A DNA stretch of 64,000 nucleotides from Gekko japonicus (lineage: Eukaryota): contig NW_015162483.1 of the NCBI RefSeq assembly GCF_001447785.1, positions 470,729 through 534,728 of the forward strand, in the 5' to 3' direction. Position 1 is the stretch's first letter. Each line of letters opens with the position of its first letter. A model generated the notes under the pieces. The model saw only the letters and a list, made by a program, of their open reading frames with translations. It made no database searches and was not told where the DNA came from. Shown here in pieces: positions 8,722-58,719 of this stretch. The position numbers were made by a program, and so were the translations under genes.

Positions 8722-8869
8722 TATACAAAAATATAATAAAACAATACAACAGTATTATATTGATTGCAAAAAGCATTAAATGGATTCTGCTTTTAGTGGT
8801 TTTTAAATCTTAGTGGGATTTGGAAAACAAAAAATGGCAGCATCTGGCCTATTAGGACCATGAGCAGGC

Positions 8870-17855: not shown

Positions 17856-18328
17856 TAGGGATGGGCATGTATTGGGAAAATGGAGTTCCTTTTAGTTTGT
17901 GGCCAAACCATGAACAGAACTAGTTTGTGAGAGGGACCACAGTTTAAAGGGACTGCACAAGACAGCCCAAAACAGCTGATCAGGGGAAACAGGCCACTCC
18001 CCATCACTCAGCTGTTTTTTGGGCTTTCTGCAAACCTTGTTTAAAGGGACTGCACGACAGCCCAAAACAGCTGAGCAGCTGGGAGAACCTCCCTGATGTT
18101 CAGCAGTTTTTGCGGCTTTCACAGGGAACAGAAAACAGATGTTTAAAGGGACTCAGAGTCCCTTTAAACCCCACCTTTCTGCTCCATCCGTGAACTGCCA
18201 TGAACTGCTTTGAAAATTCATGGAAGTTCATAATGGTAGACACATCACAAACTTCTGTTTTCAATACCACGAACAGGGCAAAATTCATGATGAATTTTGC
18301 TTCGTCGTTCAGTTCATAACCATTCCTA
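17856..18328. mobile_element. Old hAT-like MITE
   Basis: TAGGGATGGGCAT.../...AACCATTCCTA termini; internal repeats of TTTAAAGGGACT and ACAGCCCAAAACAGCTGA; TSD not retained. Confidence 0.55.
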
Positions 18329-22592: not shown

Positions 22593-25500
22593 TGTATGGG
22601 CATATTGACTTCATATAATAGATATATTACACTTCAAATGAAGTCTCCTTTATGAACATTTGTGGGAAATATAGCACACAGTTGTTTTGCTTGTGTTGCT
22701 AGTTTTGTGTCAGTAATTTTATATTTACCTAGAAACCTGATCTGATACATAAGAGCTATTCATAATCTCAAAGGCCATCATGAGAACTGCCTCGTGTCTC
22801 ATATCCAGATACTGTAACTCAATGATTTCAGAATTTAATAAACACTGATATGAAATTAAATGGGTATAATATATAAATCAATTCAGGATGACACATCGGA
22901 ATAATCTCAGAATGCTATGCTCACCACTCCCAGATATACTGAAAGCCCTCTTCCATAAAAATTATTTTCATTCCGTCTGACATTGTACCCATTAATGACT
23001 GTACTCCAGTATCAATTTATATATTGGCTGTCTTTGAGGTTAATGAAGGGGTCAAATAGATAATGACTGCTCTTTTCAAAGCCACTTTTGTTTTGAAAGA
23101 ATCTAAATTGAATGAGTACATTTTACAAGAAGATATTAATGCATTTAAAAACTTATACCTTTCATCTTTAGCCAGCAACATTTCATAAAGTGACCAATAT
23201 GTTCCATTCTGTGCAGGAATAAGGTAAGTGTGGCTATTACTCTGCAGACCTGACAGTTAACAAGTGGCATAACCCTGCCATCCATTAATCTGCAAGTAAA
23301 TCAGTAACTATTACTATATGAAATAACATTGTGCTAATTTTCAATTCTGGCACGATGCATAACTTTTTTGCACCCTCTGTAAAATCTGTATTTCAAAGGG
23401 AAAGGAAATTCTCCAATCATAATTACAATATAATAGCTATGCAATGCTATATGAATTGCTAATAATTTAGGAAAGCCTTTTAAGACTATTTTACAATCTT
23501 CAACATTGCAGTAGTACAGAAGAGTGGTCTAAAGGTCAAACATAAAGCAGCCACAGTACTCCACTATTATAGGAGGTCAGTTGTACATGTAAAACAGTCA
23601 CATCTGGCAGTGCCACCCAGATGTAAGGAAGCTACAGCTCAGATCCATGAGCTATATAATTAGCTTGTGGGTAAAAATCATAAGATGTGGTTATGGCCAT
23701 CAACCTTTGTTTACTTTGAAAATATGTTGGACAACATTGCCCCCCAAGCCGGAATAACGAGGCAGACACAAGTGCTGGGTTTAAACATAGGGCCACTTTA
23801 TTAACTGACAACCTTAACTGGACCCAAAGGCAAGGGCAAAAACAGATTGCGTTATGGTCAAGGCCAGAGGTCAAAGACCCCTCCCTTACCTTGTCAATAG
23901 GGCGAGCCACCCTGCCCCGGGTGGGAGCCCACTGCAGGGGCTACCATCCGGCCGGCTAGCCATTGCAAGACAACCCTGTAGCCCCATCCCCCAAACCGCA
24001 AGGCTCAAAGAGAGGACCTAAACAGGGCCGTCCCGAAGGCAGTCCGCTTTCCCCGCCCCGTGCCGCAAGGCACAAAGACTGTACTTACAGGACCCCTTCA
24101 ACCCAAATATGGGTGTCAGCTGGTGCTCACCGGACCGCAATCTGTATACCGCATAGCAACCTGCCATCGCTGAGGCCAAGCCTCTGCTTAGGCCTCCGCG
24201 CCCCACCAGGAGGTCCACAGCCTCCAAGCCCTTGCCGTGTGTTGTCCAGAAACATGCGCATGCCCACTCAGGCATGTGCCGCCATCCTGTTGGCAGCGCT
24301 CGGCCTGCCCATCATGACTGCTCAGATGCGGCAAATCCAGAAACTCAGCCAAGCTGCAGCCGCTCTCCCACGCATGCGGCGAGCCGCGGACTTGTAACCC
24401 CTACACCCACGGGACATAGCCATCTGATCAGCAAGCTCCCCCCACAGCCCTGCCTTCACTGACTTTGACAGAGCCCATGGGGTATACTCAGCCCCGATCA
24501 GGCCACCGTGCTACCCCAAGTAGCAGCCCGAACTTTAGGGAGGACAACCTGTCCCTACACAAAACTGTAGCAGGCCCGGCTTGCAGACTCCGTCATGCCT
24601 GCCATTCCGCCTTGGCTCACTGACAAATGCCCACTGAGCCCAGGGCATGCTCTCGGCACGATGAGCAGTTCAGCCAAACTGTGCCCACATAATCGGCCTT
24701 CTTCCCTTGCCAGTAACGCCAACCTGTAAGAGAAAAAAGGGGAGAGGCAGGGAACATTCAATTCCCCACAAGTTACCTCGGCATCCGTCAAGTACCTGAC
24801 CCGGGCCGCAGGTGAACCAGAAGGTAAAGCATCTCTTCACCGCCGAATATCCAGCTGGGGACCCCAAGGCCCCTCCTAACAGCTCAAAGCAACAAGAGTG
24901 GGCCAAAATGCCCGACACTGCCAGCTGGCGTTGAGACGCCATATCGGGACAACCCCCAGCAGGTGTCAAAGGTGCACCTAGCCCAGGAAAAGCAGCGGTC
25001 CCAAAACCCTGCTACCAAAGGCGGCCAGAGCTGCAACGAGGTGAACCTTTTCCCGTCTTTGCACCTCAAATCGCTGCAGCTGCATGAAGTCTGTCTGTTC
25101 CATATAAGTGCAGCACAGATTCCCAGGCAGCACTTCACCTTAGGCGATCGTAAAATCAAGTTGCTATAGACATCCATGAAGGTCTATAAAGGATAGAGCA
25201 CGGATATGACCCTCTAAGGCCTCCCTGCACCCCAAGATTGCTCCATCCTTGATGAAACTTCCTTTACATGCACAGATCTCCTTGGGCCTGCCACCTTGAC
25301 ATCAAGACAAGGTTAACAATGTCTTTGCAAGTTCCGAATCGTATAGGGTGCTACAAGGTAGCCGTAATCACCTTTCCCGCTTGCAGTGAAAGGTAATGGT
25401 ATCAAGCCACCCAGTCACCAACTTTTGCAGCAAGAGGATTGGCCCACCTGCCCACCGTTGTCTTGGTAGCAGTGAGTGGCTGATACTCCCCGCCGCTCTA

Positions 25501-27869
25501 CCCAATCAGTGGTCGGGCCAGAGAAGCACCTTCACCTGTCCCCATTTACGGCGGGACTGTTAGCTTTCTGCTGGCATCTTACAGTTCACCGACTACCATT
25601 CTGCTGCATTTAAGGGGACAACCACAAGGTTCCCCCCGCAGCCTTTGTATCCGGACTGTTACATAGGCATCCATGCCAGCAAAATGCATGCACACCCTCA
25701 GGAAAAACTGGGGGACACAGATATAGTTAAAGGTATCCCCCACACTCAAACGCCTAGCCTAAAAAAGCTCCTGTAAGAGGGTCCCGTTAGGGAATTTCCT
25801 GTACGCCAATAAGTCCGGACGGTGTGCCACTTGCAGCTCAGAATATGGGTTAACCGCAGCACTGAGCTCTCGACCCTGTTAACCCCGCTTGCCTGATGCC
25901 TTAATATCACCCGTAGCATCCAGGGGAATTACCAACCAGACCTTAATAAGCTGCTGGGACATTATGTAGACCAGCGCTGCTTTACGGGTTAAACTTTTCA
26001 GCCCCCCCAGCTAGGGCAATAACCAATCCAACTGACCTAAAGGGATTACCAACTCACGCCCGCAGCAGCTTCATCCGGCGTACATAGGCTGCCCAACAAG
26101 GGCAATGAGGGGCTGTCGCTAATAATGAAGGTTGGGAATGAAGCAAAACTACTTTGCCCTGAAGTAATGGAGAATCCCGTCAATATGTACTCCGGGGTGT
26201 TTCCCCATGCACGCCCAACAAACGTCCCCCAGGCTGGTAAAAGTGCATACATTTACCACCAGCCACGTACCCATAACATGGTACAGTGCGCTCACCCATT
26301 TCGCAATGTTGTAATGAACCCCCGTGTGAAATAAAAGGGGAATCTTGTTGTTTACTTGGGTGCAAGTAAAGGGGAAAATCTGTTCCCTCATGAAGGTAGG
26401 CTAAAACTTAATAAACTCCCATCCAACACAATGTGTGTCGAGCTGGGTCCAGCCCAGCAAGAGAAACAAACCATAACAATAGGGATCTATAAGGCCAAGA
26501 TCGTCAAGAGGTGTTGTAAAGTCACCTGATAGGACATAAAATCATCCATTCCAAGCGGGGACGCCATGCCAGCGGCACATGCTGCGGCTGCTTGCTCCCC
26601 CGCCAGACTAGACCAGCCCCCCTGGGCAACCTAAAGGTAACAGTTCCCTTGCTCGAAAACCAGCCAAACCCGACATAGGGTTGCGGTGCTCATCTCTGCT
26701 TCAAAGCCGATGAGCCAGCGCTATCTAAAGATGTTTCCGTGGCCATGTGGCCGGTATGACTAAACACCAAGGCACACGGAACGCTGTTACCTTGCCACCG
26801 AAGTGGTACCCATTTATCTACTTCAATTTCTTGCTTTCAAATGCTAGGTAGGCACCTAATCCCTCTGCAAAAGCAGAACCCTAGCTATTACCAACCCCCC
26901 GGCCGACAGAGAAGGGGGGGTCATAAATATGAATAATATACGGCTCACCGCACCTCTCAGTGAAGTCACTGCTCACGGAGGGCCAGAAGCAGACCCAGCT
27001 TTCAGCTTCTGCGCCATATCCGCCATAACCAGGCCCGCCCCCAGGGCAATACTTCGCTCAGCGGCAGAGTGCTGTAAGCAAAGCCTCCCCAAAAAACTTC
27101 AGCCCCGAGCTGTGAGCGAGCAACGTGCTTGCTGCCCCAATTAATTCGCTCTGGAGCCATTCTACCTGAGTGAAGCAACATGGAGGCGGAAGCCGCCAAA
27201 CCACTCCTAGCCCCTACACCGCAGCCTATCGGGAACATGGCCCAGGGTAAGTCCGAAAACCTCCTGGCATAGAAAAAACCGGAGTGCTCCCAAGCCTAAC
27301 TCCTGTTGCACAGCCCCTGTCCTACCGTCCCGAAGCAAAAGAAGACCCACGCCGTAAGGGCCGGCTGAGGCATCTGACCTGCTGCTGAACAGAAGCCAGC
27401 CGGAAAGTTGTGCAGGGCCCCGATCGCTGAGCATGCTCTCACGTGGTGTCTGTAGTTGTTCACAGCTCCATGGGCCCAGGAACGGAAATGAAACCAGGTC
27501 CTGGGCCGTTGGCGCATCGTCCTTAGTCACCTTCAGAGTAGGAGTGCGCCCTTCACAAAAAACAAATGGTTAACACCCTATCTTAAAAGGCTTATTGAAA
27601 CTGCAGTTAGGCCCCTGGGTCCCAATGCCCCTCCAATGGGCATCACAGAAGGAAGGATATTCCTGCCGCCGATCCCTCAGCATTCAGTCCCTTGCACCTG
27701 ATGACCCTATATCCTCCCAGTCCAAAGTGAAAGGCAGGGAGCGATAAGGTGGTGCCAGGCCAGAACCGTAATTCCCAAACCCCCTGGCGATGGCCAAGGT
27801 TCCTCGGTTGGATCTGCTGCCAAATTCGCGGACGTATGGTCACCCCTCATGGGTTTTCCAAGGCAATCA

Positions 27870-28005
27870 GCCTGGCTATCAAGATCTCAGGCGGAGAAGG
27901 TCTTTTCCCTCCCTGCAGCCAGGTCCATTAAACCAGATATCCGGGGATTGAACCAAGGACCTTTTGTATACCAAGCAAAGGCTCATCCACTGATCCATGG
28001 CCCCT
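27870..28005 (-). mobile_element. Degenerate tRNA-derived SINE fragment inside the Ngaro element
   Basis: CCGGGGATTGAACC...CCACTGATCCATGGCCCC is the reverse complement of a tRNA-like head with B and A boxes. Confidence 0.5.
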
Positions 28006-29022
28006 TCCGAGATATCAAAAGTGGAAGCCATGGGCTCGCCTCACCACCCTTGTAGTCCACACTGGTCTCCCTTCCAATCCAACCAGGGTAACCCTCCGTT
28101 TGTGATTTTAAATGGATCAGGCTGGCCCGGCAATCCAGGCAGAGCAACTGCGCATCTTTTTTTTTTTTTTTTAATAAAAGCATCATTGATGTGCTCCGTA
28201 GCCAGCCCCCCCGCACTGACAATGTGCGCGAGCTGAGGCCAAAAATTGCGAGCTAGCTGGCCCAACTAAGCTTAGCAGGAAGCAAGCCAAAATGGCTGAC
28301 CTAAACCATTAAATAAAATGGCTGCCAAACAGATCAAAATGGCTGACCCCTGCTGAATCTGGGACTAATTATTTAGTTAAGTAAACTGTTTCCTTGCTCA
28401 AAAGCCAGTCGGATCCGACCGAAGAAGCATGGTCGTCCTCCACTCCAAGCCTAAGAGCCAACGCTGTCCTAAGACCATTTATAGCTGCCCAAATTTAAAT
28501 GAATACCAAAATTCTATTCAAAGCAATAGGCGCCCTACCATCCAACACAACCGAGGGTCGTCAGGAATACCCCCAAAAGCTGTGTCTCCATCCGTTGCTC
28601 GCCTTATATCCCACAGAGGCCACAGACATAACACAGTTATGGTGGCTAAGCACCCCAAAGGGCAGCCATCCTCATTACGGCTGACTCCCCCGACAGCAAC
28701 CCCCGCGGGCTACTAGAATACCCTGCAATGGGCTGCTCCCAGGAATTGGGTGGAGGGCAAAGATTCCGGGGGCAGGGGAAAAACACACACACAGAAGTGA
28801 CCCATGCTGAGCTCTAGTGGACAACTGAAGAACCAACCCCCTGGGTGCCACCGTTTCCCCGGGACTCTCCATATATTGCCCCACGGACTGGCCCACGCAT
28901 GCTGCGTCCTGGCCTGGATGCATGCCCCAATCCCCAGATGGTCACCCTGGCACCAAAGGGTATGGAGCAGGCAGCCACCCCACTCGCTCAGGCCCCGCAT
29001 TTTCAGTCCCAAACGTTCAACA

Positions 29023-29400
29023 GCCGCCCGCAGCCCATTTCCTATAAAGGCCACTGTAGCCAGCGTCGCCAGCAATCTCCCCTTTGCTGCTCCGTCTGGC
29101 CCGCCGCTGTGATTGCCAAGCCGCTCCTAAGCGGCTGTAACCTCGCCTTTCCGCCGAGCGCTCCCCGGCCGCCCGCAGCCCTATTTTCCCTAGAGGCCAC
29201 CTCGCCAGCGATCCTCTCCGCTGCTCTGTCAGGCCGCCGCCGCCGTGATCACCAAGCCGCTCCCAAGCGGCTTTAAACCTCTCCTCCCCATTGAGCACTC
29301 ATCGGCCGTCCGCAGCCTATTTTCATAGAGGCCACCTTGCCAGCGATCTCCCTCTGCTGCTCCGTCGGGCTGCTCCGCCTCTCCACCGAGCTCCACCATG
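29023..29400. repeat. About three diverged tandem units of 140-145 bp in the Ngaro 5' region
   Basis: Recurring GCCGYCCGCAGCC...AGGCCAC...GCCAGCRATCTC...CCAAGCCGCTCCYAAGCGGCT. Confidence 0.7.
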
Positions 29401-30932
29401 TGCTCCCCGGCCTCAGAAGGCCCGAAAAAGGGAGCCATGTACCGGAGCTCAGCCTTTCCCGACGATTGACCGGGACTGCTGGGGAGAAGACGCAGGGCCG
29501 TCCTGTACCTCCTCGGCCCTGCCCCCACCGGATGCCCTTATATGGCGCTTTTGGCGCCAAACACCAGCCTGCCTCATCCTGCAGGGAGGCAAAGGCGATC
29601 CTCCAGCCCAACGGCTTGGTGCCGTGGGCTGTTAAATCGAATTATGGAGGGACATATATATTTTGGTGGTATTGGTTATTAGCCTTTGTATACAACATAA
29701 ATGTGTTCTTGAAGTTCCGGGGGTAGGGGATAACAGGAAAGAGTATGTATGGTGTAGAAACAGTTGCAGCGTGGTGAGAACTTTTGACTCCTGGGGCAGC
29801 TCCTGAGAGTCACCTGGATTGCCAGGTCTTTAGTGGAGCTTGAGGGCTCTCAAGCTCCCTTGGGCTTCCCGAAGAGAAACCCAAGGCAGGGGGCTTGATT
29901 CAGACATCCCGCAAGTGGCGGCGAGTGGGTGGTTAGTCCTGGATCGCCCTGAAGCGGGACCGAGGCAAGTACATCCATGGCAGCCATGGCTGCATAGCTG
30001 TAGCTGCCAGGAGAGGGGGAACTATTTTTTACTTCTACGAAGAACTTTAGACTTGAAATACCATGAGTACTTATAAACTGCAATAAAACCAATGAATCTT
30101 CAACTTAACTTAACTTTAAGCCCTTTAAATTTTAAACACCAATATCAGAAAGAGTATGTATGTCTTGAGTTGGTATCCATATATTTTACTCAGGGTGAAG
30201 TAAAATAGATGGAATTTCAGCTCCCAACCCCAGTGGTTTGGGAGCTGCTTTAGCCTCACCTCCTTTTTCAACTAAGGATGATGCCAAGCTTTCTTGCGGG
30301 GGGGGGGTATGCTGGGAGGCTTGCTCCCTGTTGGTCAAGTGTGAGAAGCAAGCGACCTTTATAAGCTTGCTCCTTCTTTTTAATGGCACTTGCCATTCAG
30401 AGTTGCCCACTGGCCCATCCTGGTATTTTGCAAGGTGGGAATAGCTGATCAAACAAGAATTTCATTTTTACTCTTTCAGATTGGCTGAGGAAGGGTTCCT
30501 TTCCCCCTGGTTTATTTTGCCACTTTATCAAGAAAGGTGTTCTCATTAAGCCTGGTTAGGCCCTACTGGGATATGAATGGAACAGTGTGGGCTTTTGCTT
30601 AATCTATGGGACTATGGTGAACACTCTGAGGCATTTGATGATGGGAGGGGAAGGCTTCCCAAACCAGCCTCTCATGGATAATCAGTCAAGGGGATTGGCA
30701 ATGGGGTCCCCTCAGGGCTGGAGCTCCACCAGTTGAACACTAGTGTTTGCTAGCATAGGAGGAGGGTGATCAAGGAACACCCTCTCTCAGCGCACCTTGA
30801 CATGTAGGCCAGGAAAAGCAATGGGAAAATTAAGGCTGCCTTGCACTTGGAGGCAGGGTGGATTTACCCATCATTATTAGTGGCATACCTCTGGCAGTCC
30901 ATTAGGTAGGAGCCCAAACTGAGCATTAGATA

Positions 30933-31652
30933 CTAACAAGAGGGGGACCCGCGATACTCGCGGGGGGGGAGAAGAGCTCCGTCTCCTCCATCCCCCCCGC
31001 TCAATCTCCCCGAGGCGGCGGCAGCAGCGGCGAGGCCAGTCCTCCCCCCCGCCCGACTCTGAGGCGGCGGCAGCGGAGAGGCCAGTCCTTCCCCCCCTTT
31101 GCCGGGCTCGGCGGCGGCGGCGAGGCCGGTCGTCCNNNNNNNNNNNNNNNNNNNNNNNNNNNNNNNNNNNNNNNNNNNNNNNNNNNNNNNNNNNNNNNNN
31201 NNNNNNNNNNNNNNNNNNNNNNNNNNNNNNNNNNNNNNNNNNNNNNNNNNNNNNNNNNNNNNNNNNNNNCTCCCCCCCACCCGCCCACCTGCCCGCCCGG
31301 CTCCAAGGCAGCGGCAGTGGCGGAGAGGCCAGTCCTTCCCCCCCTTTGCCGGGCTCGGCGGTGGCGGCGGGGGCGAGGCTGGTCCCCCCGGCCACCCGCC
31401 CAGCTCCGAGGAGGCGGCAGCAGCGGCGAGGCCAGCTACAGAGCATTCCCTGTGCATGCGCAGGGGATGCTCTGTCACTTTCGGTGGGATTTAAACATCC
31501 CCCCCTCGAAATTTTTTCAACTTTTTCGATTTTTGTGCACACGTGGGGACCGCCCCACGTGTGCACAAACCTCCCCCTCCCCCCCAAGTGCCCCCGGAGC
31601 GCAGATTTAGCGATCCGCACTCACTGGAGCAACTTGGCTACTAGTATATAGA
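30933..31652 (-). mobile_element. Non-autonomous Helitron with GC-rich minisatellite
   Basis: On minus strand: 5' A|TC at 31653/31652; 3' hairpin CCCGCGA-nnn-TCGCGGG (30948-30964) 15 nt from the end; terminal TTAG|T (variant of CTAG); no TSD. Confidence 0.75.
31136..31269. other. Assembly gap within the Helitron minisatellite
   Basis: Run of N. Confidence 1.
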
Positions 31653-35446: not shown

Positions 35447-35670
35447 GGCTGTGGTCACACGGAACAGAAGCCACACAAGTGAGACGGAAAACAGACGCAT
35501 CTGGGAAGCGTAGCACTCCCGTGGCACAACCGAGGCTTCCAGCCGAAACTGCGTGGCAAAAAACTAGTACCTCGGAGGTACTAGTTTCCGGAAACTGCGG
35601 GGCAAGGGCGGGCATCTGATCGCGTTTCCGGTGGCATCTGGCGCCCGCCCATGTCCCCTTGCAAATAAGG
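35447..35670. mobile_element. Left half of a Harbinger-type MITE
   Basis: GGCTGTGGTCACACG preceded by TAA; homologous to 8191-8445; right part missing. Confidence 0.8.
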
Positions 35671-36455
35671 TGGGGCTTCTAAGGCCAACTGGTGTTCTAA
35701 CTAAGATGACAGCATCGTCGGCATGCAGTAAGATAGACACATGCTGTTGTTGAAGTTTTGGTGAATGTAAACTGGGGGAGTCCAAGTAACTTGCTATATA
35801 ATTAATATATAGATTAAACAGGGAAGAGGCTAGTATGCAACCCTGCCTAACTCCCCTATAGGTGTTAATAGGGTCCGATAAATTTCCTTTCCTGTTAAGC
35901 CTAACCTGCAAATGGGTGTTATCATGAAGAGCCCACAATAAAAATAGGAGGCTTCTATCAATTGAGGAAGCTTCTAAGCTGGGCCATAATTTCGGCCTCG
36001 ATATTGAATCAAAAGCCACTTTCAAGTCAATGAAAGCAGCAAAAAGCAAATGAGGACCTTTAGCAGCGTATTTTTCTATAAGGTGTTGAATTGTAAGGCA
36101 GTGGTATAAAGTGGATCTAAACTCTCTAAAAACAGCTTGCTCTGTTACAATCACATTTTCTTGGATCAGCCAATCCTCAAACTTTACCAGAAGGTGTTTA
36201 GCATATAACTTGCTACATATATTTAAAGGGCTAATAGGCCAATAATTTGTGGGCTCTTCTCTTGCACCCTTTTTGAATATGGGGACCACTATTGCCATAT
36301 TCCACTCTGAGGTAAGGCCTGAAGAGTCTATAAAAGTGAAAAGGGCTGCAAGGAAGGGTGTCCACCAATCAATATTTTCTTTAAAAAAATCAGTTGGCAG
36401 TCCGTCAGACCCTAAAACCTTAGCAGATTTTAATTCAACAATATAGGATTTAATT

Positions 36456-37533
36456 TCCTCTTGAGAAACTGTGGCCAGGAAGGCAAGTCCTCAAAATCAG
36501 CAGTTGTCACTGGGGTTAAGGGAGAGTCTTTATACAATTGCTCAAAAGAAGTAACCCATTTGCAAGGCTGTATTGGGGGATCAGTCTGGGAGGGGAAAAT
36601 TTTTTTTAATCAGTGACCAACTGCCAAAAGAGGGAGGAATTTTTCTGTTTGGCAGCCAGAATTAATTCTGCCCAAAGTGTTTTTTCTTTTCTTTTGTTGG
36701 ATTAGGTGTTTGTAATTCCTTTTTTGTGACCAGAGTTCTTGTTGGATTAGAAATCTTTGGTCACCACTTGATTTTTTAAACTGATAGTAAATGGTAGAAA
36801 GCTCTTTTCTTGCTTTTTGCCAATCCACATCAAAGCAGGGTTTAGATTTCTTGTAAGATGTGGTGGAATGGCCTTTAGGTTCACACTGGCCCCGGTCACA
36901 CGGAGCACTAGCCACGCTAGAGAGACGGAAGATAGCCGGATTTTCCGGGCACGATCTCACCGCCACATCTGGGAAGCGTAGAGCTCCCGTGGCTCCTCTT
37001 GAGAAACTGTGGCCAGGAAGGCAAGTCCTCAAAATCAGCAGTTGTCACTGGGGTTAAGGGAGAGTCTTTATACAATTGCTCAAAAGAAGTAACCCATTTG
37101 CAAGGCTGTATTGGGGGATCAGTCTGGGAGGGGAAAATTTTTTTTAATCAGTGACCAACTGCCAAAAGAGGGAGGAATTTTTCTGTTTGGCAGCCAGAAT
37201 TAATTCTGCCCAAAGTGTTTTTTCTTTTCTTTTGTTGGATTAGGTGTTTGTAATTCCTTTTTTGTGACCAGAGTTCTTGTTGGATTAGAAATCTTTGGTC
37301 ACCACTTGATTTTTTAAACTGATAGTAAATGGTAGAAAGCTCTTTTCTTGCTTTTTGCCAATCCACATCAAAGCAGGGTTTAGATTTCTTGTAAGATGTG
37401 GTGGAATGGCCTTTAGGTTCACACTGGCCCCGGTCACACGGAGCACTAGCCACGCTAGAGAGACGGAAGATAGCCGGATTTTCCGGGCACGATCTCACCG
37501 CCACATCTGGGAAGCGTAGAGCTCCCGTGGCTC
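36456..37533. repeat. 538-bp head-to-tail tandem duplication
   Basis: 36456-36995 appears identical to 36994-37533 by eye; 2-bp TC junction overlap; includes the first 108 bp of the MITE. Confidence 0.95.
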
Positions 37534-37903
37534 AACCGAGGCTTCCCTCCGAAGATGTGCGGCAAAAAACCGCGGGGCAAGGGCGGGCGTCTCATCGCAT
37601 TTCCGGTGGCATCCGGTGCCCGCCCATGCCCCATTGCGAAAAGGCTTTCCCCCCCCGAAGTCTCCAGGGATGCACACAAGCACCCAATAGGGCATGCACA
37701 TACTTCTGGTTAAAAAAAACAACCCCGTTTGCCGTGCCGCGTCGCTTCTTTGGCACGTCGTGTGATCGGCACCTCCCCCTAACCACGGGACCTCGACAGG
37801 ACCGCGAGGGGATGCCTGATTGTGCAGTCATGCGTTATTTCGCTGCGGGGCAAACAGCCATGCCTCCCCCCGCCCACGATATCCAGCTCATGTGACCGGG
37901 GCC
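37426..37903. mobile_element. Harbinger-type MITE, full length
   Basis: TIR GGCCCCGGTCACA/TGTGACCGGGGCC; same family as 8191-8721; flanks ACT and ATA do not match. Confidence 0.85.
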
Positions 37904-40900
37904 ATAGAATAATTTTTAAATCCTGGACAAATCTATTATAACATGTAAGAGGGTCACTCTGTATGTTAAATTCCTGGTAGGTAATTTTGGAAATTTGGGA
38001 ACCTTTAGCCTCTATTACTTTAGTTTTGCTTGCATCTGGGGAGACCATCTCACCCTATGACCTAATACCTGGGAACCTTCATGTAAAGGCTGAAGGGAAG
38101 CGGCTTGAAATAAAGAAGGAAACTTAAATTGGAGAAAGAGGGGGAAGTGGTCACTATAAAAAAATGGGAGCACCTTAAAGTTAGTTATTAGAGGTAATAG
38201 AGAAGCGCATGCTAACATATAATCAATAGTGCTAAGTTTCTGACCCGACATATAGGTAAACTCAGCCGGATAATCTTCCAAGAAAGTACCATTTAAAATG
38301 TACAGACCCAGCTTGTAGGCCATTTTGGCTAGATATAAACCTGAAACTTTTGAAGTGGAATTCTTAAAACACCTAGGAAGAGGAGAAAATTCATGAGTCA
38401 TACGAGTCACTGAAAAATTCCTTATATTTAAATTCCATACTTGGATCATCTTTGCCAAGGTGAGCATTAAAATCTCCAAGAAGTAAAACATTGGCTTCTG
38501 GATGCTCCGCAATTAGATTTACTATATAACTCTCTAGGGAGCTCCAAGCTTCATCTAATTGGACTTTTAGTGAAAGGGGAGGAATATAGACAATTATTAA
38601 AATCAGACTATTTGTTTTACTATGCAGAACTACTGTCATAGCTCTTGAGTCAAGGGGAGGTTTCTCTATACATTTAAACTCCAAAGAGGCTGAGATTAAT
38701 ATTGCCAGACCACCTTTCAACCTTCCCGGGCATATTGGCCAGTGTTTGCTGCAGCCTTGCCTCTTTGTTTTTGCCCTGGCGGGAAAAAAGCTGTCCCCCC
38801 CCATTGAAAACAATGGAAGAAGGATGGGGTCATCCTCCTTGGGAACCCATAAAATTGCACCCCCAGATCTAATCTTCTTCAAAAGACAGGCACCAGCAGC
38901 TCTGCTGTAAATCTGGTGCCTGTAGCTTGAAAATCAGCTCCTCCTCCAACTTTCCCATAGGTTATAATGGACCCGAAAAAAACTGGATTCAACCCCCCCC
39001 CCAAAAAAAAACCCCAAATCCAAATATCATACTGGTATTGGAATTTTGGGATGCTAGAATAAATGAAAATTTTCAGGTTCAATATACCTGAATCTGAAAA
39101 ATACCAATTTTTGTTTGGTGCACACTCCTAGGGGGTACCTTATTCAGGGGCCTTTAGAATTGGACCCCTTTGTCTAATTACCTTGAAACTCCCTCTGTAG
39201 ATGTATCCAGTTTGTAAGTATATGTTTACACAAACAAATATTTCTTCTAATTTCCAACACATGCCATCCCCCATAGCTAATAATAGTGTAACTGCTGTTC
39301 TACTTCCTTCCCTGGGTCCAGTTTGGGTAACAATTCTCAGTAACTTTTAGAGTTCTGAATTTTCTGGTCTTTTTTCTGTAGTAAAGCTGATGAATTAAGA
39401 ACCTTCAGTTTTTTATTCTGTATATTCAAATTTTGTACAAAGTGCTATACATTTGCAGATTGCTATAGCTTTTTGCTCCTTTAGTTAATTTGCATTTTCT
39501 TCCTGTTTATATTGACAACATGCATGTGTACATTGATAAAACATAGAAACAAAATCAGTCTTCATTTGATCATTCTGTTTTATCAAGATTCTTTTTACAT
39601 TGTGTTTAATATGTGCGCGCATCAACGAAACTCCATGCAAAAAGATGAAACAGTTACACCTACAATAATATTAAGGTTTTTCCAATGTTTTATCTATATC
39701 TTTATGCACATTGATATATACATTGCACAAACACAGAGAGGGATATAATTTGAAGGAACTATGCATGTATTTTTAAAAAGTCTCCTACTTAAAACAGAAT
39801 TAAGGAGGTGCAGAACACAAACCAGGCAGAATGTCTAGTGCAATAAAGGGACTGATCTGAGGAAATCTGTTTGTCTCTGCTCACAAGTGCATCACAATAA
39901 TTAGCCTGATATTTGAACACATGACTTCATGGCAAATCCATGCCCTAATATCACTGAATTCACAAGAACTGTTATACTCAGAGTTGCTCATACTTCATTT
40001 GTCTGATTAATTGCAACTATCACTAATTTCCAGGTCAAAAGAGAGCCCCTTTTTAAATCTAAAATTTTAATTGCTAAGGGAGAAACCCAGTAATTTTCCT
40101 TTCTAATGTATGCCAAAACAATGAAGAGACTGCACATACCACTGTGAAGACAAATTCTTGCCTTCTATCAGCATAACATGACTTTATGAGTAATGAGGGA
40201 TAGCTGTCTCATGTACACAGAATGTCTTTTCACCATCCATGATGACTTTATTCTAGGCAATGTATTAACTATAACCTCTATAACACCAAGCTTCCAGATG
40301 TTTCTATGGCTATGGATTCTTTTTAAGAAAAGGAAACATTTTATGGTAGATATCTTAGCAAAACATTTATTTCAAAGTGATGTACTGAATTCAACATTCA
40401 AAACACTGAAAATTGAAAAGAAACAGGACAGGCAGGCAACCCCAGCGAGGTGGAAGGCACAGGGAAAGCCTGCTCATATGGATGCAAATGGAGGAAAACC
40501 ATTATAATTGACTTGCAGTGAGCCTACTCGATGAGTTTGATTGTATATTGATAACATTTAGCCTCTATGACTCTATGAAAAAACTCTGGTTGTACAGCTC
40601 AGGTGCACACTTTCTCTTCAGCTAGCATTTTCATTTGCACATGAGCTAATAGAAGACCACTGATTTTATGCAAACTGAAGTGTTAGCAGAAGCGGAAGTG
40701 CACTCCACCACAGAGACTACCTAGTACATTTGGAATCTTTTCATAAGGTCCAAACCTAAGTCTACATCCATGGGATTTTTTGTTTGAGATCATGCTTGAA
40801 GGTTGTGAGGGCTATGTGAGTCTTGCAACATCTTTTGGCGGGGGGGGGGAGTTGATGTGATTAATTTTTCAATAATTGGTACTCCAAAAGTTCTCTTTAC

Positions 40901-45014: not shown

Positions 45015-45312
45015 TAGAGTTGCCAGCTTTGTCTTGGGAAAATCCTGCCACTTTGGGGGTAGTGCCCGCGGAGAATAGAGTTATTTCAGATGGGATGTGG
45101 CACCAAAGAGTCTGCCCAGGGCAACTGAAAAACACAGGGGAGATCTTGGAACCTAAGCAGTGTCAGTACTTGGAAGGGAGACCGCCAAGTAAGCTTGCAG
45201 AGGAAGGCAAACCACCCACTTTCTGGGGTGAGCTGCAACTTGATGGCACTTTACACACACACACAACTGGAGATCAACTGTAATTCTGGGAGAACTCCAG
45301 GTCCCATCTGCC
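45015..45312. mobile_element. TAGGGTTGCCA-family MITE containing a 5S-SINE fragment
   Basis: TAGAGTTGCCA start; internal AGTACTTGGAAGGGAGACCGCC and (CA)n; homologous to 56769-57015. Confidence 0.5.
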
Positions 45313-46279: not shown

Positions 46280-46502
46280 GAGGTCACCAACACTGGGTTA
46301 GACCAGCATGCTAATCTTCTGGTGGAGTCTGCACCTCTCCCAGAATTACTACTAACCCCCCAGTTCTCCTGTAGAAACTGGAACTTTTGAAGGGTGGACT
46401 TTATGGCATTATACCCTGCTGAGGTCCCTTCCTCGTCAAACTCTCCCTTTCCCAGGCTTCAACCCCAAACTTCCCAGAATTGCCCCAAATTTAGTAACCC
46501 TA
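46280..46502. mobile_element. TAGGGTTGCCA-family MITE in reverse orientation
   Basis: Reverse-complement similarity to 56769-57015; ends AACCCTA. Confidence 0.5.
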
Positions 46503-50196: not shown

Positions 50197-50571
50197 AGAA
50201 CAATGTTCAAGTCCAGTGGGGCACCTTTAAGACCAACAAAATTTTATTCAAGGTATAAGCTTTCATGTGCACACACACTACTTCAGATACAATTAAATGG
50301 AAGTTAACAGTCCACACATATAGGTAGAGGGTGAGCAGCAAATTAGCATACAGCATAATAAAGGTCCAACAACTTTTTTTATGCTGTATGCTGATTTGCT
50401 GCTCACCCTATATATGTATGGACTGATAACTTCCATTTCAATGTATCTGAAGAAATGTGCGTGCACATGAAAGCTTATACCTTGAATAAAATTTTGTTGG
50501 TCTTATAGGTGCCATTGGACTTGAATGTTGTTCTGATGCTTCAGACAAATACAGCTACCCCTCAGAATCTA
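50197..50571. mobile_element. Penelope-like inverted pseudo-LTR pair with minimal hammerhead motif
   Basis: About 160-bp arms 50197-50358 and 50379-50534; GTAT-CTGAAGA-A-ATGTG-CGTG-CACAT-GAAA-GCTTA-TAC at 50443-50480. Confidence 0.8.
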
Positions 50572-53802: not shown

Positions 53803-55266
53803 CCTCTTAGGTTAAAAACTGTCAACTCAAATTTGACTGGATTTAGCTTTTCCAACTCTTCCTTAGATTTCTCCCCAAAAATTGTTGGGGGGCCTTTCCA
53901 ATGAAGTGATCAGAATTAAAAGTTCCAGGTAGGTTTTGTCAATATATCATATTTTCTTCTGTAGAAACACAAAAGTATGGGGTACCAAAAAAACCCAACT
54001 CACCCTTAGTTCAATTCCTGTGAATTCTGCCAACAGCAAAATAACAGATCATTAAATGTATTATTTACCTTGAAGAATGATCCTTCTATTCAGCTGAGTG
54101 GCATTTTCTTATTTGTTTAGGGGTTTTTTCCTTACAAGTGCCTGTATTTGTTTCCTAACTTTTATCTCTAATGCTCTGTGCTGTTGTTTAACCTTTCTTT
54201 ATCTATTTAAACTTTCACCTAAATGCATTTTTGAAGTCTAGAAAATGCTCAGGTTGTTCTTCTGGAGGAAAACAATCCCCAGAAAACATAGTGTGGTGTT
54301 AGTTCTGGGTAAATAAGCTGTGTTCATGATAGATCAGGAAGGAATAGTAATAACAGAAATAAAGGGCTGTAATTCTTAGCAGCTTGAACTTCTAGCTGTC
54401 AGCTACTGACAATTCAAACAAACATCAAAGAATATGCTATTTAGAACTCAGTTAATAAATTATTCCTTTTGCTATCCAACACATAAACCTCCAGCCATGA
54501 AGCTAACATCCCATAACCTGACAGTCTCCAGCTGGCATTTTGGATTTTCATGGCCTTCAGCCAGCTCAGTGTCATTCTCTCAGTCACAGTGGAATGGAGA
54601 ACAAGGTTCTTGCTGTATATACATACCCACTTCTATTTGTAGTTTGCCCCAGGAATAAACTAATTGCTGCTGTAAAACCTTACTCCCACCTTAGCTCAAA
54701 TTCATCTATAAACCCAGGGAGAGAGCAAACTGTAAAGGCGAGCCAGCTGGCCTTTTGGCTTTGTCTAGCCAATTAGTAGCAGGCTGCCAATTAGCTGCTA
54801 GAATAGTTAAGAATGAGAATCAACTAACATGTAAAATGTGAGGCAGATTCCAGTATTTACAGTGCAATCCTATCAGGAGTTACTCCAGTCTAAGTCTTTT
54901 GAAATAAACATTGGTTACCTCACACAGTTTTTCTCTGAGCAGACTCAATAATACACAAGAGCAATCCCCCATTATAACAGATATCTGAGGAAAAGGTCTT
55001 CATAGGCCCTGGTCACACGGGAGGCTTTGATCCGCGAGAGGGACAGATCGGGGGCGCAGCAAGCGGGCGCGATCACACCGCAACATCTGGGAAGCGGCAC
55101 GCATCTGTCCCCGATTTGTCTCTTCCGGCTGAAGATGCAGATCAAAAAAACCCCTACAAAGCACTACTACTTACCTGAAAATCCGCAGCAGGGGTGGCCG
55201 TGGGATTGCTGGCGCGCCCATCTCCGGCAGCATGTGAGGCCCCCGGCCAAACTGTGCAGGCATGCA

Positions 55267-57357
55267 CAGGGCCGGCTCACTCACTAGGCAAACTAGGCGC
55301 TCGCCTAGAGTGCGCCAGCCCTTAGGGGTGCCAAACTGGAACCCCCCCACCAAAAGCCCTCCCCCGCCAAAAGCCCTGCAACTTTCTTGACCGGGTGGGT
55401 GACTGCTGTGCGCCGCTGGGTCTTTCAGTGCGCTCAGAAGCGCAGCCACCCTCCTTTTGGAGGAGCAGGAGCCGAGGAGCTCTCGGAGGAGGGGAATTGG
55501 AGGAGAGAGCATTAGTTTCGTTTGCCTGTTTCCGAAAGCCGCGACATTTCTCTTCCAGCCGATTGATTTTCTGTTGGCAGAGAATGGACAGCCTGGTCAT
55601 CAACAGTTGCTAGAAAAAGGTGGAAAGCAGAGCATGGTGGGGAGACACCGCCTTTGGCCGGCATTTGCAGGCACCTTGGAGGGAGGAAGAGAGACCCTTC
55701 CTGCTGCTCTCCAGGGGACTGGCAGGGGGCGTCCCTGGGACCAGGGAGAGGCTTCCCTGCAGTGCTGGGGGGAGAGGTTGGGGGTCTCCAGCGAATAGGG
55801 GTGAAAGGAGACTTGGAAAGCTTCCCCCAAGGAGAAGAAAATCGCTGAGGGAACCGTGGAAGGAAGCAGAGGAGCGCAGCAGAGACTGCTGACCGAAGGG
55901 AGTCACCACATCCATCTGCCCCCCTTTCCCAAACCACAGCAAGTTTCTCATCTTCCCCCCACCTCTTACTACTTGCGGGGAGGGGGGTGGCAGAAACCCT
56001 CAGATTTCCCCTAGGAAGCGAAGGTAAAACAATTTCTCCCCCTGCCCCGCGTTAAAATAAAGTCCACGCAGACAGGAAACAACACAGGGCCAGGTACACA
56101 CAGGAGATTTTTTTTTTTTTACCAGACCAAGTTTGCAGAAAAATCCATGGAAGAAAATTACCAGTTTGATATTTTTAGGAAATGGATCAGCAGCCTGGGG
56201 GCCTAAACACTAGCTTAAGCCCCACCTCCAGCTCCCAGCAGCACTCAGTCAGGCTTGGAGGAGCTGGAGGTAGCAGGTGCTGCTTCTGCCGCCATCAGCC
56301 AGAAGGGTAAGTTGGTCGGGATGTAAGGAGCAGGGGCTTGTGTCAGGTGGATTGGGGTGGGAGGAAGTCCAGGGCTGCACCCACCCAGCCAGCCAGCCAG
56401 GAGAAAGCGAGCCCCAGGAACTCTTGTGCTGCAGGGAGCACATTGCTCCAGGATACAGAGAATCCTGGGCTCACTTTCTCCACTGGGTGTGTGTGTGTCT
56501 GCGCTCTCTGTCACCCTCTCTCTTTCTGTTTCTCCCTCTCTTTCTGTTGAGGTGTGTGAGAGCTGGAAATGAGAGGCTGGGGAGCTGCTCCACCCCACTC
56601 CAGGCTGCTTCCCTTGCAGCCTGACTTTCTTTCTTCCCTTCTTTCTGTCTTTCATTTCTCTCTTCCCACCTATTAGGTTTTTCCCCAGCTTCTCCTCCTC
56701 CCTCCTCTCCTCATCTATTTGCTTTCTTTCCACCTTTCCCCTCCTTCCCTCGCTAAAATAGCCCTAGTTAGGGTTGCCAGGTTCCCCCTGGCCACCTCTG
56801 GGGGATGAGGGGAGGGATGGCCCAGTCCAGGTTAGGAAACTCCTGGAGATTTGGGAATGGAGTCTGGGGAGGACAGGGACCTCAGTGGGGCACAATGCCA
56901 TAGAGTCCACCCTTTAGAACATCAGGTTTTTCCCCAGGGAAACTGATCTCTGTAAACTGGAAATGAGCTGTAATTCCAGGGATCCCCAGGTCCCACCTGG
57001 AGGCTGGCATCCCTAGCTCCAGTGCTGAAATTGGAAGCTCTGGTTCTGCTGTGTGAGTCCTGGCACTAGCTTGCATTTGCCAAATGAGAGTGTTTGGGTT
57101 TCTCTGTGAATTTGAGGACAGGAACTGGCTTTAAGTGAGATTGGAGTCAGTGTGCTGTTGGGGTTTGATGTTTGTGGGGGAGGGGAGAAAGTAAGCCTGG
57201 CATATCACATCATAACCAAAGCCATTGCTCATGTTTATCATCATCATCATCATCATCATTTCCTAAAATGCATTTATGTTTGAAAATTGGTGGGCACATG
57301 GGGGGGCGCCAGAAGGTAGCCTCGCCTAGTGTGCAAAAAAACCTGGAGCCGGCCCTG
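55267..57357. mobile_element. Large non-autonomous hAT element with non-transposase cargo
   Basis: Perfect 12-bp TIR CAGGGCCGGCTC; subterminal CTAGGC/GCCTAG repeats; 8-bp flanks GGCATGCA and GGCGCACA, both derivable from GGCGCGCA by CpG decay. Confidence 0.85.
56769..57015. mobile_element. TAGGGTTGCCA-family hAT MITE (innermost nested element)
   Basis: TIR TAGGGTTGCCA/TGGCATCCCTA; 8-bp flanks GCCCTAGT/GCTCCAGT (6 of 8). Confidence 0.75.
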
Positions 57358-58719
57358 GGCGCACACATGCACAGCGGGCTGCCTTGCACACTGATCTGTG
57401 GCTTCCCCCCCCCGACTTCTAATCGTGCTGGGGAGCAACTGCGCGACAGCTCGAGGGATCTGTCTGATCCCGCCGCCGCGCATCTCTTTAGATGCAGCTC
57501 AAAAAAGCCACACTTCAGCCGCACCTTTTCCCCCAGTGTGACCAGGGCCATATTTGCCTTTTCCTCCTCATGATATCAGTGTCTAGAGAGAGAAACATGG
57601 GGTTTGCCTTCCCTCAGGTCTAACACAGATTGCAGTTTGTTTACCCTGGCCTATAAAACCTATGCCAATTTTCTGTCTGTGTAATCCTGTCCTGTTTTTT
57701 ACTCATTCATGTTCTGATTTTACTAGGCCTGATCTGTACACAAGTTTAGAGGATTCTATTTTACAAATTACAGGGAAAGAATACGCATACAATCCATTTC
57801 TGGGGAACAGGGTATTAGCAGTTGGAGTCACGGAGAGCCCGGGGATAGTAGTAATGTATTGGTTCTAACCAAGCATTTTATGAGTGTTCTTCTAAATGTG
57901 AGTGGAGGCCAAAGAAATATGTTGCTGCAGGTGGCTTTGGGAACCCCATATATGCATAGAACAGAATAAGAATTCTGATATGGCAGTGCAGATTGTATCA
58001 CTTTAGACTGCAGATGAGGGGTGCCTTTTTAATGATTCCCTTTGTATAAAAAGTGCCGCACAAGTAAAAAACTCACAAAAAACCCACCACTATAGAAGAG
58101 TGATTAAAATCCAGCCTACTCCTTGCCAAGCTAATTTCCACACCGAGCAGGGTTGGTCTTGGGTTGCCATAAGTTGGATGAAACATGACAGCAAACAAGC
58201 ACAAAAACAATAAGCAAATAAATAGATGGGTGAGAGAAAATTTAAAGAGAGAGGCTGCCTAAGGGAGGGAAAGCTGAAGATGATCAAGAGAGAGAAATGG
58301 TAGTTGAGGGACAGAGGCTGCGGTTCCTATTTCTGGGGAAGGGAATGACAAAATGCTAGTGGAAGATTCTGTGAGTCCTTGTGAGTCCCTCACTTGCATT
58401 CTATATAAGTGGGAGATCCTCAAGGACTTAAGGGGGCATCTAATTCCCTCTTCCCCACTATATCCCTTTCCCTTCCCTGAAAACCCACAGCCTCTCCTCC
58501 TCCACCACTTCTTTATCTGATTCTCACCCACTAGGCAACCTGCTTTTATCTTCTCCCCATCTTCAGTTTTACCTCCTTACCTCCCCCTTCAGCCCCTAGC
58601 AGGGAAAACTCTGATTGAGTTGCATGGTTCCATAGCCAAGCTGGGCCAGCTGTGCAATATGGACCCTGCAAAGATTTGTGGGCGACCTCACTTTTCCCAG
58701 TATCCTCCTTTTCACAATA

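What the first reader, a model, noticed from the sequence alone, without database searches (positions are those of the whole stretch)
55005..57549. Triple-nested composite transposon: Harbinger MITE > 2.1-kb cargo-bearing hAT > small hAT MITE (Pack-TYPE-like)
Seen: perfect outer 14-bp TIRs with an ATA TSD; perfect inner 12-bp TIRs with an 8-bp TSD reconstructable as GGCGCGCA; no transposase inside; about 1.9 kb of GC-rich, gene-like interior instead. Known: Pack-MULE/Pack-TYPE elements capture host gene fragments in plants and are less well described in vertebrates. Inferred: this is a reptile Pack-hAT, and because both TIR sets are intact the cargo could in principle be moved by two unrelated transposases. 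What looks like a CpG-island promoter here would then be imported DNA.
Basis: partly seen in the sequence, partly recalled or inferred. Interest (0 to 1): 0.8.

Follow-up and report, generated by a model that had tools for sequence, protein, structure and literature searches.

The report
Ordinary nested transposons in gecko DNA
Three cut-and-paste transposon relics sit one inside another in a repeat-rich stretch of a gecko genome; the nesting is real, but I found no sign that the middle one carries a captured host gene, so it looks ordinary.

Summary
The nested structure is real. A roughly 446-bp Harbinger/Tourist-like MITE has perfect 14-bp TIRs and ATA/ATA flanks, and four relatives lie in the same window. 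It is split by a 2,091-bp element with perfect 12-bp hAT-type TIRs (CAGGGCCGGCTC), mirrored subterminal CTAGGCG motifs and a decayed 8-bp target duplication (5/8). That element holds a 248-bp hAT-type MITE whose family also recurs in the window.

The "Pack-hAT carrying host gene or CpG-island promoter" reading is not supported. There was no Pfam domain in 20 open segments, no PDB match for three, and no real relative for the longest open frame among 1.84 billion proteins. Interior CpG o/e is 0.26, and the CpG-rich parts are mainly the outer MITE arms. The one exon-like piece (ATG plus GTAAGT donor) is homologous to the subterminal part of a different hAT MITE at 1258-1654, so it is a transposon-borne module.

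The decisive tests could not be run: genome-wide copies, a TIR-less donor, and empty sites.

Best reading: an ordinary non-autonomous hAT nested in a MITE. A non-coding Pack-type capture remains possible at about 0.2.

The parts
55002..55004 (.). Left copy of the 3-bp target-site duplication (ATA) of the outer MITE
   Evidence: Read directly. The same ATA follows the right TIR at 57550-57552.
55005..55266 (+). Left arm of the outer Harbinger/Tourist-like MITE. TIR GGCCCTGGTCACAC at 55005-55018. The last 8 nt (55259-55266, GGCATGCA) are the left copy of the inner element's TSD.
   Evidence: Perfect 14-bp TIR. Seven matches of 2 mismatches or fewer in the window against 0.36 expected. Subterminal similarity to copies at 8193-8722, 35447-35670, 36888-36993 and 37426-37903. 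CpG o/e 0.78.
55267..57357 (+). Inner 2,091-bp non-autonomous hAT-like element. TIR CAGGGCCGGCTC at 55267-55278 and 57346-57357. No transposase.
   Evidence: Perfect 12-bp TIR starting with the hAT-type YARNG. CTAGGCG occurs 4 times in 64 kb, and 3 of them lie 27-42 nt inside the two tips in mirror orientation. A 14-mer CTCGCCTAGNGTGC is shared by both ends. No Pfam domain in 20 open segments.
55279..55343 (+). Left subterminal region of the inner element, carrying the CACTAGGC / CTAGGCG / CGCCTAG motifs
55344..55377 (+). 17-bp tandem repeat x2 (CCCCCRCCAAAAGCCCT). It underlies the weak, spurious SARAF Pfam hit.
55345..55679 (+). The only part of the interior with borderline CpG-island-like composition (GC 0.57, o/e 0.55)
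56177..56314 (+). Exon-like module. Acceptor-like tttttAG at 56178-56179, ATG at 56182, donor-like G|GTAAGT at 56306/56307. Homologous to nt 27-136 of the separate hAT MITE at 1258-1654.
   Evidence: blastn gave 36 nt at 89%. MAFFT alignment. Gapped local score 67 against shuffles of 24.2 +/- 4.3, maximum 47. Splice signals were read from the sequence only. No RNA evidence.
56761..56768 (.). Left flank (GCCCTAGT) of the innermost MITE. The right flank is GCTCCAGT at 57017-57024 (6/8).
56769..57016 (+). Innermost 248-bp hAT-type MITE, TIR TAGGGTTGCCAG / CTGGCATCCCTA (11/12)
   Evidence: Family relatives in the window at 46361-46454 (74% over 97 nt) and 45265-45310 (80% over 46 nt). No CpG at all.
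57237..57259 (+). (ATC)7.7 microsatellite inside the inner element
57290..57345 (+). Right subterminal region of the inner element (GCCTAGTGTGC, T7 run)
57358..57549 (+). Right arm of the outer MITE. The first 8 nt (57358-57365, GGCGCACA) are the right copy of the inner TSD. TIR at 57536-57549.
   Evidence: CpG o/e 0.69.
57550..57552 (.). Right copy of the outer 3-bp TSD (ATA)

Best explanation
This is a stack of ordinary class II transposon insertions in a repeat-rich, probably intronic or intergenic, stretch of a gecko genome.

1. A roughly 446-bp CpG-rich Harbinger/Tourist-like MITE inserted at an A/T-rich site and duplicated ATA.
2. A 2.1-kb non-autonomous hAT-type element then cut into it and duplicated an 8-mer (about GGCGCRCA). 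Its 12-bp TIRs and short subterminal CTAGGCG-type repeats would be the binding sites for a transposase supplied in trans. Two CpG-type transitions in one copy of the 8-mer and one in the other have since blurred it.
3. A 248-bp hAT-type MITE lies inside that element. It either inserted later or was already there when the element moved.

The 1.9-kb interior is non-coding patchwork, of the kind typical of long non-autonomous hAT elements. It contains a GC-rich 5' part, an exon-like module that another hAT MITE also carries near its 5' end, CT-rich low-complexity DNA and a microsatellite. One possibility is that the exon-like module is the remnant of a transposase gene's 5' UTR or first exon.

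Shown: the TIRs, flanks, motifs, family relatives, absence of coding homology and composition. Inferred: the order of events, trans-mobilisation, and the origin of the interior.
For: Outer element:
- Perfect 14-bp TIR and ATA/ATA flanks.
- The TIR recurs 7 times at 2 mismatches or fewer, against 0.36 expected.
- Relatives of 478-530 bp have TAT/TAT or A/T-only 3-bp flanks. The 2,545-bp span here therefore needs a ~2.1-kb insertion.

Inner element:
- Perfect 12-bp TIR beginning CAGGG.
- Mirrored CTAGGCG motifs: 3 of the 4 occurrences in the whole window sit within 45 nt of the two tips.
- The two ends share a 14-mer at 13/14.
- Relative B of the host MITE has one copy of the 8-mer region where this locus has two.
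- The TIR matches 10/12 the 12-bp TIR CAGAGSCGGYCC of the Anolis orphan families hAT-N6/N7/N8_AC (PMC3014272).
- In Anolis, non-autonomous hAT elements of 1.5-2.4 kb are listed, and some families share no homology with any autonomous element outside the TIRs (same paper).

No sign of cargo:
- No Pfam domain above threshold in 20 open segments.
- PDB search blank.
- The 179-aa open frame had only one repetitive, spurious hit among 1.84e9 representatives.
- The exon-like module is shared with the hAT MITE at 1258-1654.
- Interior CpG o/e is 0.26.
Against: - No second copy of the inner element was seen: none in the 64-kb window, and the genome could not be searched. 'Multi-copy family' is therefore an assumption.
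- The inner TSD is only 5/8, and by chance a 12-bp inverted repeat with such flanks is expected about 0.8 times per window.
- The interior does show a tidy string of donor-like, acceptor-like, ATG and donor-like signals, plus a borderline CpG-rich first 330 bp.
- Earlier unchecked notes of this scan report several Pack-type hAT and Harbinger elements with host cargo in this same genome. That raises the prior for capture.
Confidence: 0.62

Rival explanations
1. True Pack-hAT (Pack-TIR). The hAT termini enclose about 1.9 kb copied from a host locus, for example the promoter, a non-coding exon 1, a short intron, an ATG exon and the start of the next intron. The copy would have been acquired by gap-filling repair or template switching, and may or may not have been transposed afterwards.
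For: - There is no transposase, and the TIR ends are intact.
- The interior has a GC-rich 5' part with borderline CpG-island composition at 55345-55679.
- Consensus-like splice signals surround an ATG at 56182.
- The rest is intron-like: an embedded MITE, a microsatellite and CT-rich tracts.
- The interior has no relatives in 61 kb of surrounding repeat-rich DNA except one module.
- Pack-TIRs are documented in animals and are mostly hAT (208 of 370; PMC8277862).
- Earlier notes of this scan report similar elements in this genome (unchecked).
Against: - No coding or domain homology was found in the segments tested: Pfam on 20 open segments, PDB on three, phmmer on one frame.
- The exon-like piece is shared with an unrelated-TIR hAT MITE, so it is more likely transposon sequence.
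- Most of the interior has CpG o/e of 0.1-0.3.
- No parental copy was identified, and that is a defining requirement.
Confidence: 0.22
2. The inner 'element' never transposed as such. The 2.1 kb is filler DNA or a rearrangement inside the MITE, and the 12-bp inverted repeat with partial flank match is coincidence.
For: Perfect 12-bp inverted repeats are common here, with three other pairs in 3.6 kb. About 0.8 pairs with 5/8 or better flanks are expected per shuffled window. The flanking MITE sequence is internally repetitive (ATGCACA motifs, D6), and that inflates the flank similarity.
Against: The inverted repeat starts with the hAT-type CAGGG. It carries mirrored and direct subterminal motifs that are otherwise almost absent from the window. 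It resembles a known squamate hAT TIR. My rough estimate of the joint chance is below 1e-3. This estimate is inference, not a tool result.
Confidence: 0.06
3. The composite was assembled elsewhere, and the whole 2.5-kb unit moved here on the outer Harbinger-type TIRs. The nesting order would then not reflect events at this locus.
For: The outer TIRs and TSD are perfect, while the inner TSD is decayed. Earlier unchecked notes describe recently mobile ~2-kb Harbinger-like elements in this genome.
Against: No second copy of the composite is known. A 3-bp TSD has little room to decay, so its perfection says little.
Confidence: 0.1

Closest known systems
Anolis carolinensis orphan non-autonomous families hAT-N6_AC / hAT-N7_AC / hAT-N8_AC (Novick et al. 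2011, PMC3014272)
   Same: The TIR is 12 bp and matches 10/12 (CAGAGSCGGYCC versus CAGGGCCGGCTC). Both have an 8-bp TSD, no transposase and no known autonomous partner, and both are squamate.
   Different: The Anolis families are 288-810 bp and high-copy, while this element is 2,091 bp and of unknown copy number. I could compare only the published TIR string, not the family sequences.
Pack-TIR / Pack-hAT elements of animals (Tan et al. 2021, PMC8277862), e.g. Pack-hAT-N8_XT carrying the CAPSL 5' UTR in Xenopus
   Same: hAT termini on both sides, no transposase, and a GC-rich 5'-gene-like interior.
   Different: A Pack-TIR is defined by an identified parental non-TE copy. None was found here, and the one exon-like piece is shared with another transposon.
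Tourist-like MITEs of the PIF/Harbinger superfamily, e.g. rice mPing (TIR recalled from memory as GGCCAGTCACAATGG)
   Same: The outer element is about 450 bp and non-coding, with a 14-bp TIR beginning GGCC..GTCACA, a 3-bp A/T target duplication and several copies.
   Different: The duplications seen here are ATA and TAT, not the canonical TWA (TAA/TTA). No transposase partner was examined. The resemblance to mPing is a recalled lead, not a test.
Nested transposon insertions in general
   Same: Younger elements interrupt older ones, and each has its own TIR and TSD.
   Different: Nothing of note. Three DNA-transposon layers within 2.5 kb is simply a tidy example.

Membership tests
hAT superfamily, non-autonomous element (inner, 55267-57357) | Short TIRs (about 10-25 bp) beginning YARNG | tested here: met
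   CAGGGCCGGCTC, 12/12 complementary.
hAT superfamily, non-autonomous element (inner, 55267-57357) | 8-bp target-site duplication | tested here: inconclusive
   GGCATGCA versus GGCGCACA, 5/8, with three transition differences. Relative B of the host MITE has one copy of this region, but the alignment is loose.
hAT superfamily, non-autonomous element (inner, 55267-57357) | Short subterminal repeats shared by both ends (transposase binding sites) | tested here: met
   CTAGGCG occurs 3 times within 45 nt of the tips and only once in the rest of the 64 kb. The 14-mer CTCGCCTAGNGTGC is at both ends.
hAT superfamily, non-autonomous element (inner, 55267-57357) | Other copies, and an autonomous partner encoding a BED/DDE/hATC transposase with the same termini | not testable with these tools
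   No eukaryotic genome collection is searchable. There is no copy in the window.
Pack-TIR / Pack-TYPE (gene-capturing non-autonomous TIR element) | TIR-transposon sequence on both sides and no transposase | tested here: met
Pack-TIR / Pack-TYPE (gene-capturing non-autonomous TIR element) | Interior recognisably derived from a host gene (coding homology) | tested here: not met
   Pfam on 20 open segments gave only SARAF at 17.7 bits, below the 30.8 cut-off and lying on a tandem repeat. PDB was blank. phmmer against 1.84e9 proteins gave one spurious hit. Only one frame received the large search, and non-coding cargo would escape all of these tests.
Pack-TIR / Pack-TYPE (gene-capturing non-autonomous TIR element) | Parental (donor) copy elsewhere in the genome without the TIRs | not testable with these tools
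   This needs BLASTN against the source genome. There is no donor in the 64-kb window.
PIF/Harbinger MITE (outer, 55005-57549) | 3-bp TSD, canonically TWA | tested here: inconclusive
   The duplications are 3 bp and A/T-only but not TWA: ATA/ATA here and TAT/TAT at 8193-8722. There is TAA left of 35447, and ACT versus ATA at 37426-37903.
PIF/Harbinger MITE (outer, 55005-57549) | TIRs of about 14-25 bp, small non-coding body, multiple copies | tested here: met
   14/14 TIR, 446 bp once the insert is removed, and four relatives in the window.
PIF/Harbinger MITE (outer, 55005-57549) | Cognate DDE transposase plus Myb-like protein with matching TIRs | not testable with these tools
   None is present in the window, and the genome is not searchable.
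hAT-type MITE (innermost, 56769-57016) | TIR beginning YARNG, 8-bp TSD, repeated family | tested here: met
   TAGGGWTGCCAG 11/12. Flanks 6/8. Relatives at 46361-46454 and 45265-45310.

The most novel reading that the evidence does not exclude
The 2.1-kb element is a mobile, multi-copy Pack-hAT. It picked up the non-coding 5' end of a gecko gene (promoter, leader exon, short intron, ATG exon with donor) and can drop a promoter-plus-splice-donor cassette at new sites. The shared module in the MITE at 1258-1654 would then be a shortened derivative of the same capture.
Probability: 0.1. Interest if true: 0.5.

Novelty: new member of a known kind. Interest (0 to 1): 0.17.

Why it matters
As it stands, it matters little. 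Nested DNA transposons are routine in squamate genomes, and Pack-TIR capture is already catalogued in animals. The useful outcome is a caution: the CpG-rich, promoter-looking signal at this locus comes from transposon sequence, mainly the arms of a CpG-rich Harbinger-like MITE family, and not from a host promoter. If a donor locus were found, this would add one more vertebrate Pack-hAT to a gecko genome that, according to earlier unchecked notes of this scan, seems unusually rich in them.

Tried and rejected
- **Read laying.** One call was sent, with DNA runs of three organisms and one RNA run, for a depth profile, empty sites and splice joints. No read evidence was obtained.
- **Exact look-ups.** Eight ORFs of the region were looked up in the 15-billion-protein collection, and none is on record.
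- **Word-based protein search.** The ORF across the left junction gave nothing.
- **SARAF.** The Pfam hit (E = 0.003, 17.7 bits, cut-off 30.8) on 55325-55603(-) was rejected. It lies partly on a 17-bp tandem repeat, is Pro/Gly/Ser-rich, and about 0.06 such hits are expected over the 20 segments.
- **Rfam.** The search of 54700-58300 gave only a chance mir-156 match.
- **Earlier findings.** Searches by sequence were blank three times.
- **CpG depletion as an age clock.** Rejected. The young MITE at 1258-1654, with perfect TIR and TSD, has o/e 0.17. The 12-19% diverged Harbinger-like copies have o/e of about 0.9.
- **An internal second hAT terminus at 56085 (CAGGGCCAGGTA).** It has 3 mismatches, and such matches are frequent (44 in the window). 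Not significant.
- **Collection scans.** I did not scan the viral, prokaryotic or metagenome collections for the termini. They hold no gecko DNA, and a 19-base degenerate pattern would return mostly chance hits.
Full report
**What is there**

The window is repeat-rich vertebrate DNA. Earlier notes of this scan call the genome a gecko, Gekko (unchecked). LINE reverse-transcriptase and endonuclease fragments lie at 21293-21997, 35567-36298 and 38394-38882.

At the stated coordinates the sequence shows three pairs of terminal inverted repeats, one inside another.

**Outer element**

- GGCCCTGGTCACAC at 55005-55018 is perfectly complementary to 57536-57549. The match is 18/20 when extended. Both ends are flanked by ATA.
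- The TIR is not a chance palindrome. It recurs seven times in the window at 2 mismatches or fewer, against 0.36 expected.
- It marks a family of 478-530-bp non-coding elements at 8193-8722 (flanks TAT/TAT) and 37426-37903. A LINE-truncated copy starts at 35447 (left flank TAA), and a duplicated left end lies at 36888.
- Once the insert is removed, the copy here is 446 bp. It is a diverged subfamily, 63-70% identical to the others over the first 90-200 nt.
- A 14-bp TIR starting GGCC, a 3-bp A/T-only duplication and the small size fit a Tourist-like PIF/Harbinger MITE. The duplications seen are ATA and TAT, however, not the canonical TWA.
- The family is strikingly CpG-rich. CpG o/e is 0.89-0.96 in the other copies despite 12-19% pairwise divergence, and 0.69-0.78 here.

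**Middle element**

- CAGGGCCGGCTC at 55267-55278 is perfectly complementary to 57346-57357.
- On its own this is weak evidence. Three other perfect 12-mers in inverted orientation occur in the same 3.6 kb. In block-shuffled windows, a perfect 12-bp inverted repeat with 5/8 or better matching flanks turns up about 0.8 times per 64 kb.
- The flanks here, GGCATGCA and GGCGCACA, match only 5/8.
- The subterminal sequence is what makes the ends convincing. The heptamer CTAGGCG occurs four times in the whole window. Three of those lie 27-42 nt inside the two tips in mirrored orientation. A 14-mer, CTCGCCTAGNGTGC, is present at both ends at 13/14.
- The TIR begins with the hAT-type YARNG. It matches 10/12 the 12-bp TIR CAGAGSCGGYCC of the Anolis orphan families hAT-N6/N7/N8_AC (PMC3014272).
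- Local alignment with MITE copy B shows one copy of the 8-mer region where this locus has two. The alignment is loose.
- The MITE family is about 450-530 bp and this one spans 2,545 bp, so about 2.1 kb must have been inserted.
- I take the element to be a genuine hAT-type insertion, at roughly 90%.

**Innermost element**

- It runs from 56769 to 57016.
- Its TIR is TAGGGTTGCCAG / CTGGCATCCCTA (11/12) and its flanks are GCCCTAGT / GCTCCAGT (6/8).
- Diverged relatives lie at 46361-46454 and 45265-45310.

**Is the interior captured host DNA?**

I found no positive evidence.

- Pfam scans of 20 start-to-stop or stop-free segments covering all six frames found no transposase and no domain above threshold.
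- The single sub-threshold hit was SARAF, at 17.7 bits against a 30.8 cut-off. It falls on a Pro/Gly-rich frame partly encoded by a 17-bp tandem repeat, and I judge it spurious.
- PDB sequence searches were blank.
- The longest open frame is 179 aa, at 55515-56051 on the minus strand. It had one hit among 1.84 billion representatives, a repetitive 801-aa protein matched in seven short stretches. That hit is an artefact.
- In composition the interior is GC-richer than the flanks, 53% against 36-45%, but its CpG o/e is 0.26.
- Windows of 200 bp that meet the usual CpG-island criteria exist only at 54900-55324, 55345-55679 and 57255-57619. These are the outer MITE arms, the hAT tips and the first ~330 bp of the interior. 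The promoter-like CpG signal is therefore largely the Harbinger-like MITE's own sequence.

**The exon-like piece**

- The interior does contain a neat run of signals: donor-like GAAG|GTAAAA at 56023/56024, acceptor-like tttttAG|G at 56179/56180, ATG at 56182, and donor-like AAGG|GTAAGT at 56306/56307.
- This segment, 56177-56314, is homologous to nt 27-136 of a different transposon in the same window. That transposon is a 397-bp hAT-type MITE at 1258-1654 with perfect 13-bp TIRs (CAGGGGTCATTTC) and a perfect 8-bp duplication GAAGTGAG.
- BLAST found 36 nt at 89% identity.
- A gapped local alignment includes the GGTAAGTTG donor-like end. It scores 67, against 24.2 +/- 4.3 (maximum 47) for shuffles.
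- In the MITE the module carries ATG CAG CCA G|GTAAGT. Here the corresponding ATG appears as ATC after a one-base loss (my reading of the sequences).
- A second copy within 64 kb of a multi-gigabase genome argues for a high-copy, transposon-borne module, not a unique host exon. A plausible source is the leader or first exon of a hAT transposase gene, retained in deletion derivatives. That source is inference.
- The rest of the interior is CT-rich low-complexity DNA, an (ATC)n microsatellite and the small MITE.

**What could not be done**

- The decisive tests are genome-wide copies, a TIR-less donor, empty orthologous sites and RNA junctions. All need the gecko genome or reads.
- The run search found two DNA runs of one organism holding about half of the sampled words. 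Runs of four other organisms held 11-19%.
I worked beside those places afterwards and sent none of their letters as a query to any search tool.
- Exact and word-based protein look-ups of ORFs from the region found nothing. Open frames from non-coding gecko DNA therefore seem not to be represented in those collections.
- CpG depletion cannot serve as an age clock here. I therefore cannot say whether the small MITE entered before or after the hAT element arrived.

**Comparison with what is known, and verdict**

- Nested class II insertions are routine.
- Long non-autonomous hAT elements whose interiors share nothing with any transposase are described in Anolis (PMC3014272).
- Pack-TIR capture is documented in 100 animal genomes. 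Of 370 cases, 208 are hAT, most of them single-copy products of gap-filling repair (PMC8277862).
- Earlier unchecked notes of this scan list several Pack-type hAT and Harbinger elements in this same genome, and a "mobile CpG island" inside a Harbinger-type element. That raises the prior somewhat, and it agrees with the CpG-rich MITE family measured here.
- My odds are about 0.6 for an ordinary non-autonomous hAT with a patchwork non-coding interior, and about 0.2 for a Pack-type capture of non-coding host DNA. About 0.1 goes to the composite having moved here as one unit, and 0.06 to a chance inverted repeat around filler DNA.
- That both TIR sets are intact is true. Mobilisation by two transposases is speculation without evidence.
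- Interest is low.

Noticed in passing
window 1258-1654 (flanks 1250-1257 and 1655-1662): A young-looking 397-bp hAT-type MITE with perfect 13-bp TIRs CAGGGGTCATTTC and a perfect 8-bp TSD GAAGTGAG. Near its 5' end (minus strand) it carries an exon-like module, ATG CAG CCA G|GTAAGT. It also holds a piece of the palindromic repeat seen at about 50205-50525. CpG o/e is only 0.17.
   Followed up: partly
window 8193-8722, 35447-35670, 36888-36993, 37426-37903: Harbinger-like MITE family with TIR GGCYSYGGTCACAC. It keeps CpG o/e at 0.89-0.96 despite 12-19% pairwise divergence, so these copies behave like small dispersed CpG islands.
   Followed up: partly
window 36800-36993 and 37339-37532: A near-identical duplication of about 194 bp, spaced about 540 bp apart. 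It includes the left ~106 bp of the MITE at 37426, and that MITE's flanks do not match (ACT versus ATA).
   Followed up: no
window ~50205-50525: A long-armed palindromic repeat (arms contain GGCACCTTTAAGACCAACAAAATTTTATTCAAGGTATAAGCTTTCATGTGCAC). A fragment of the same family sits inside the MITE at 1441-1488.
   Followed up: no
window 21293-21997(-), 35567-36298(-), 38394-38882(-): LINE fragments. Two are reverse transcriptase (RVT_1, E = 8e-20 and 2e-17) and one is a weak endonuclease match. The RT fragment at 35567-36298 cuts off the MITE copy that starts at 35447.
   Followed up: partly
window ~24000-31000: The largest GC- and CpG-rich block of the window (GC 0.53-0.56, CpG o/e 0.5-0.6). 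An assembly gap lies at 31136-31269. It may be a genuine host CpG island or gene 5' end. I did not examine it.
   Followed up: no
window 18039-18169: Candidate 131-bp MITE: a perfect 12-bp inverted repeat GTTTAAAGGGAC with 6/8 matching 8-bp flanks.
   Followed up: no
window 54642-54679: These places tripped the read tool's filter, which the tool itself says is no evidence of anything. I left them out of all later searches.
   Followed up: no
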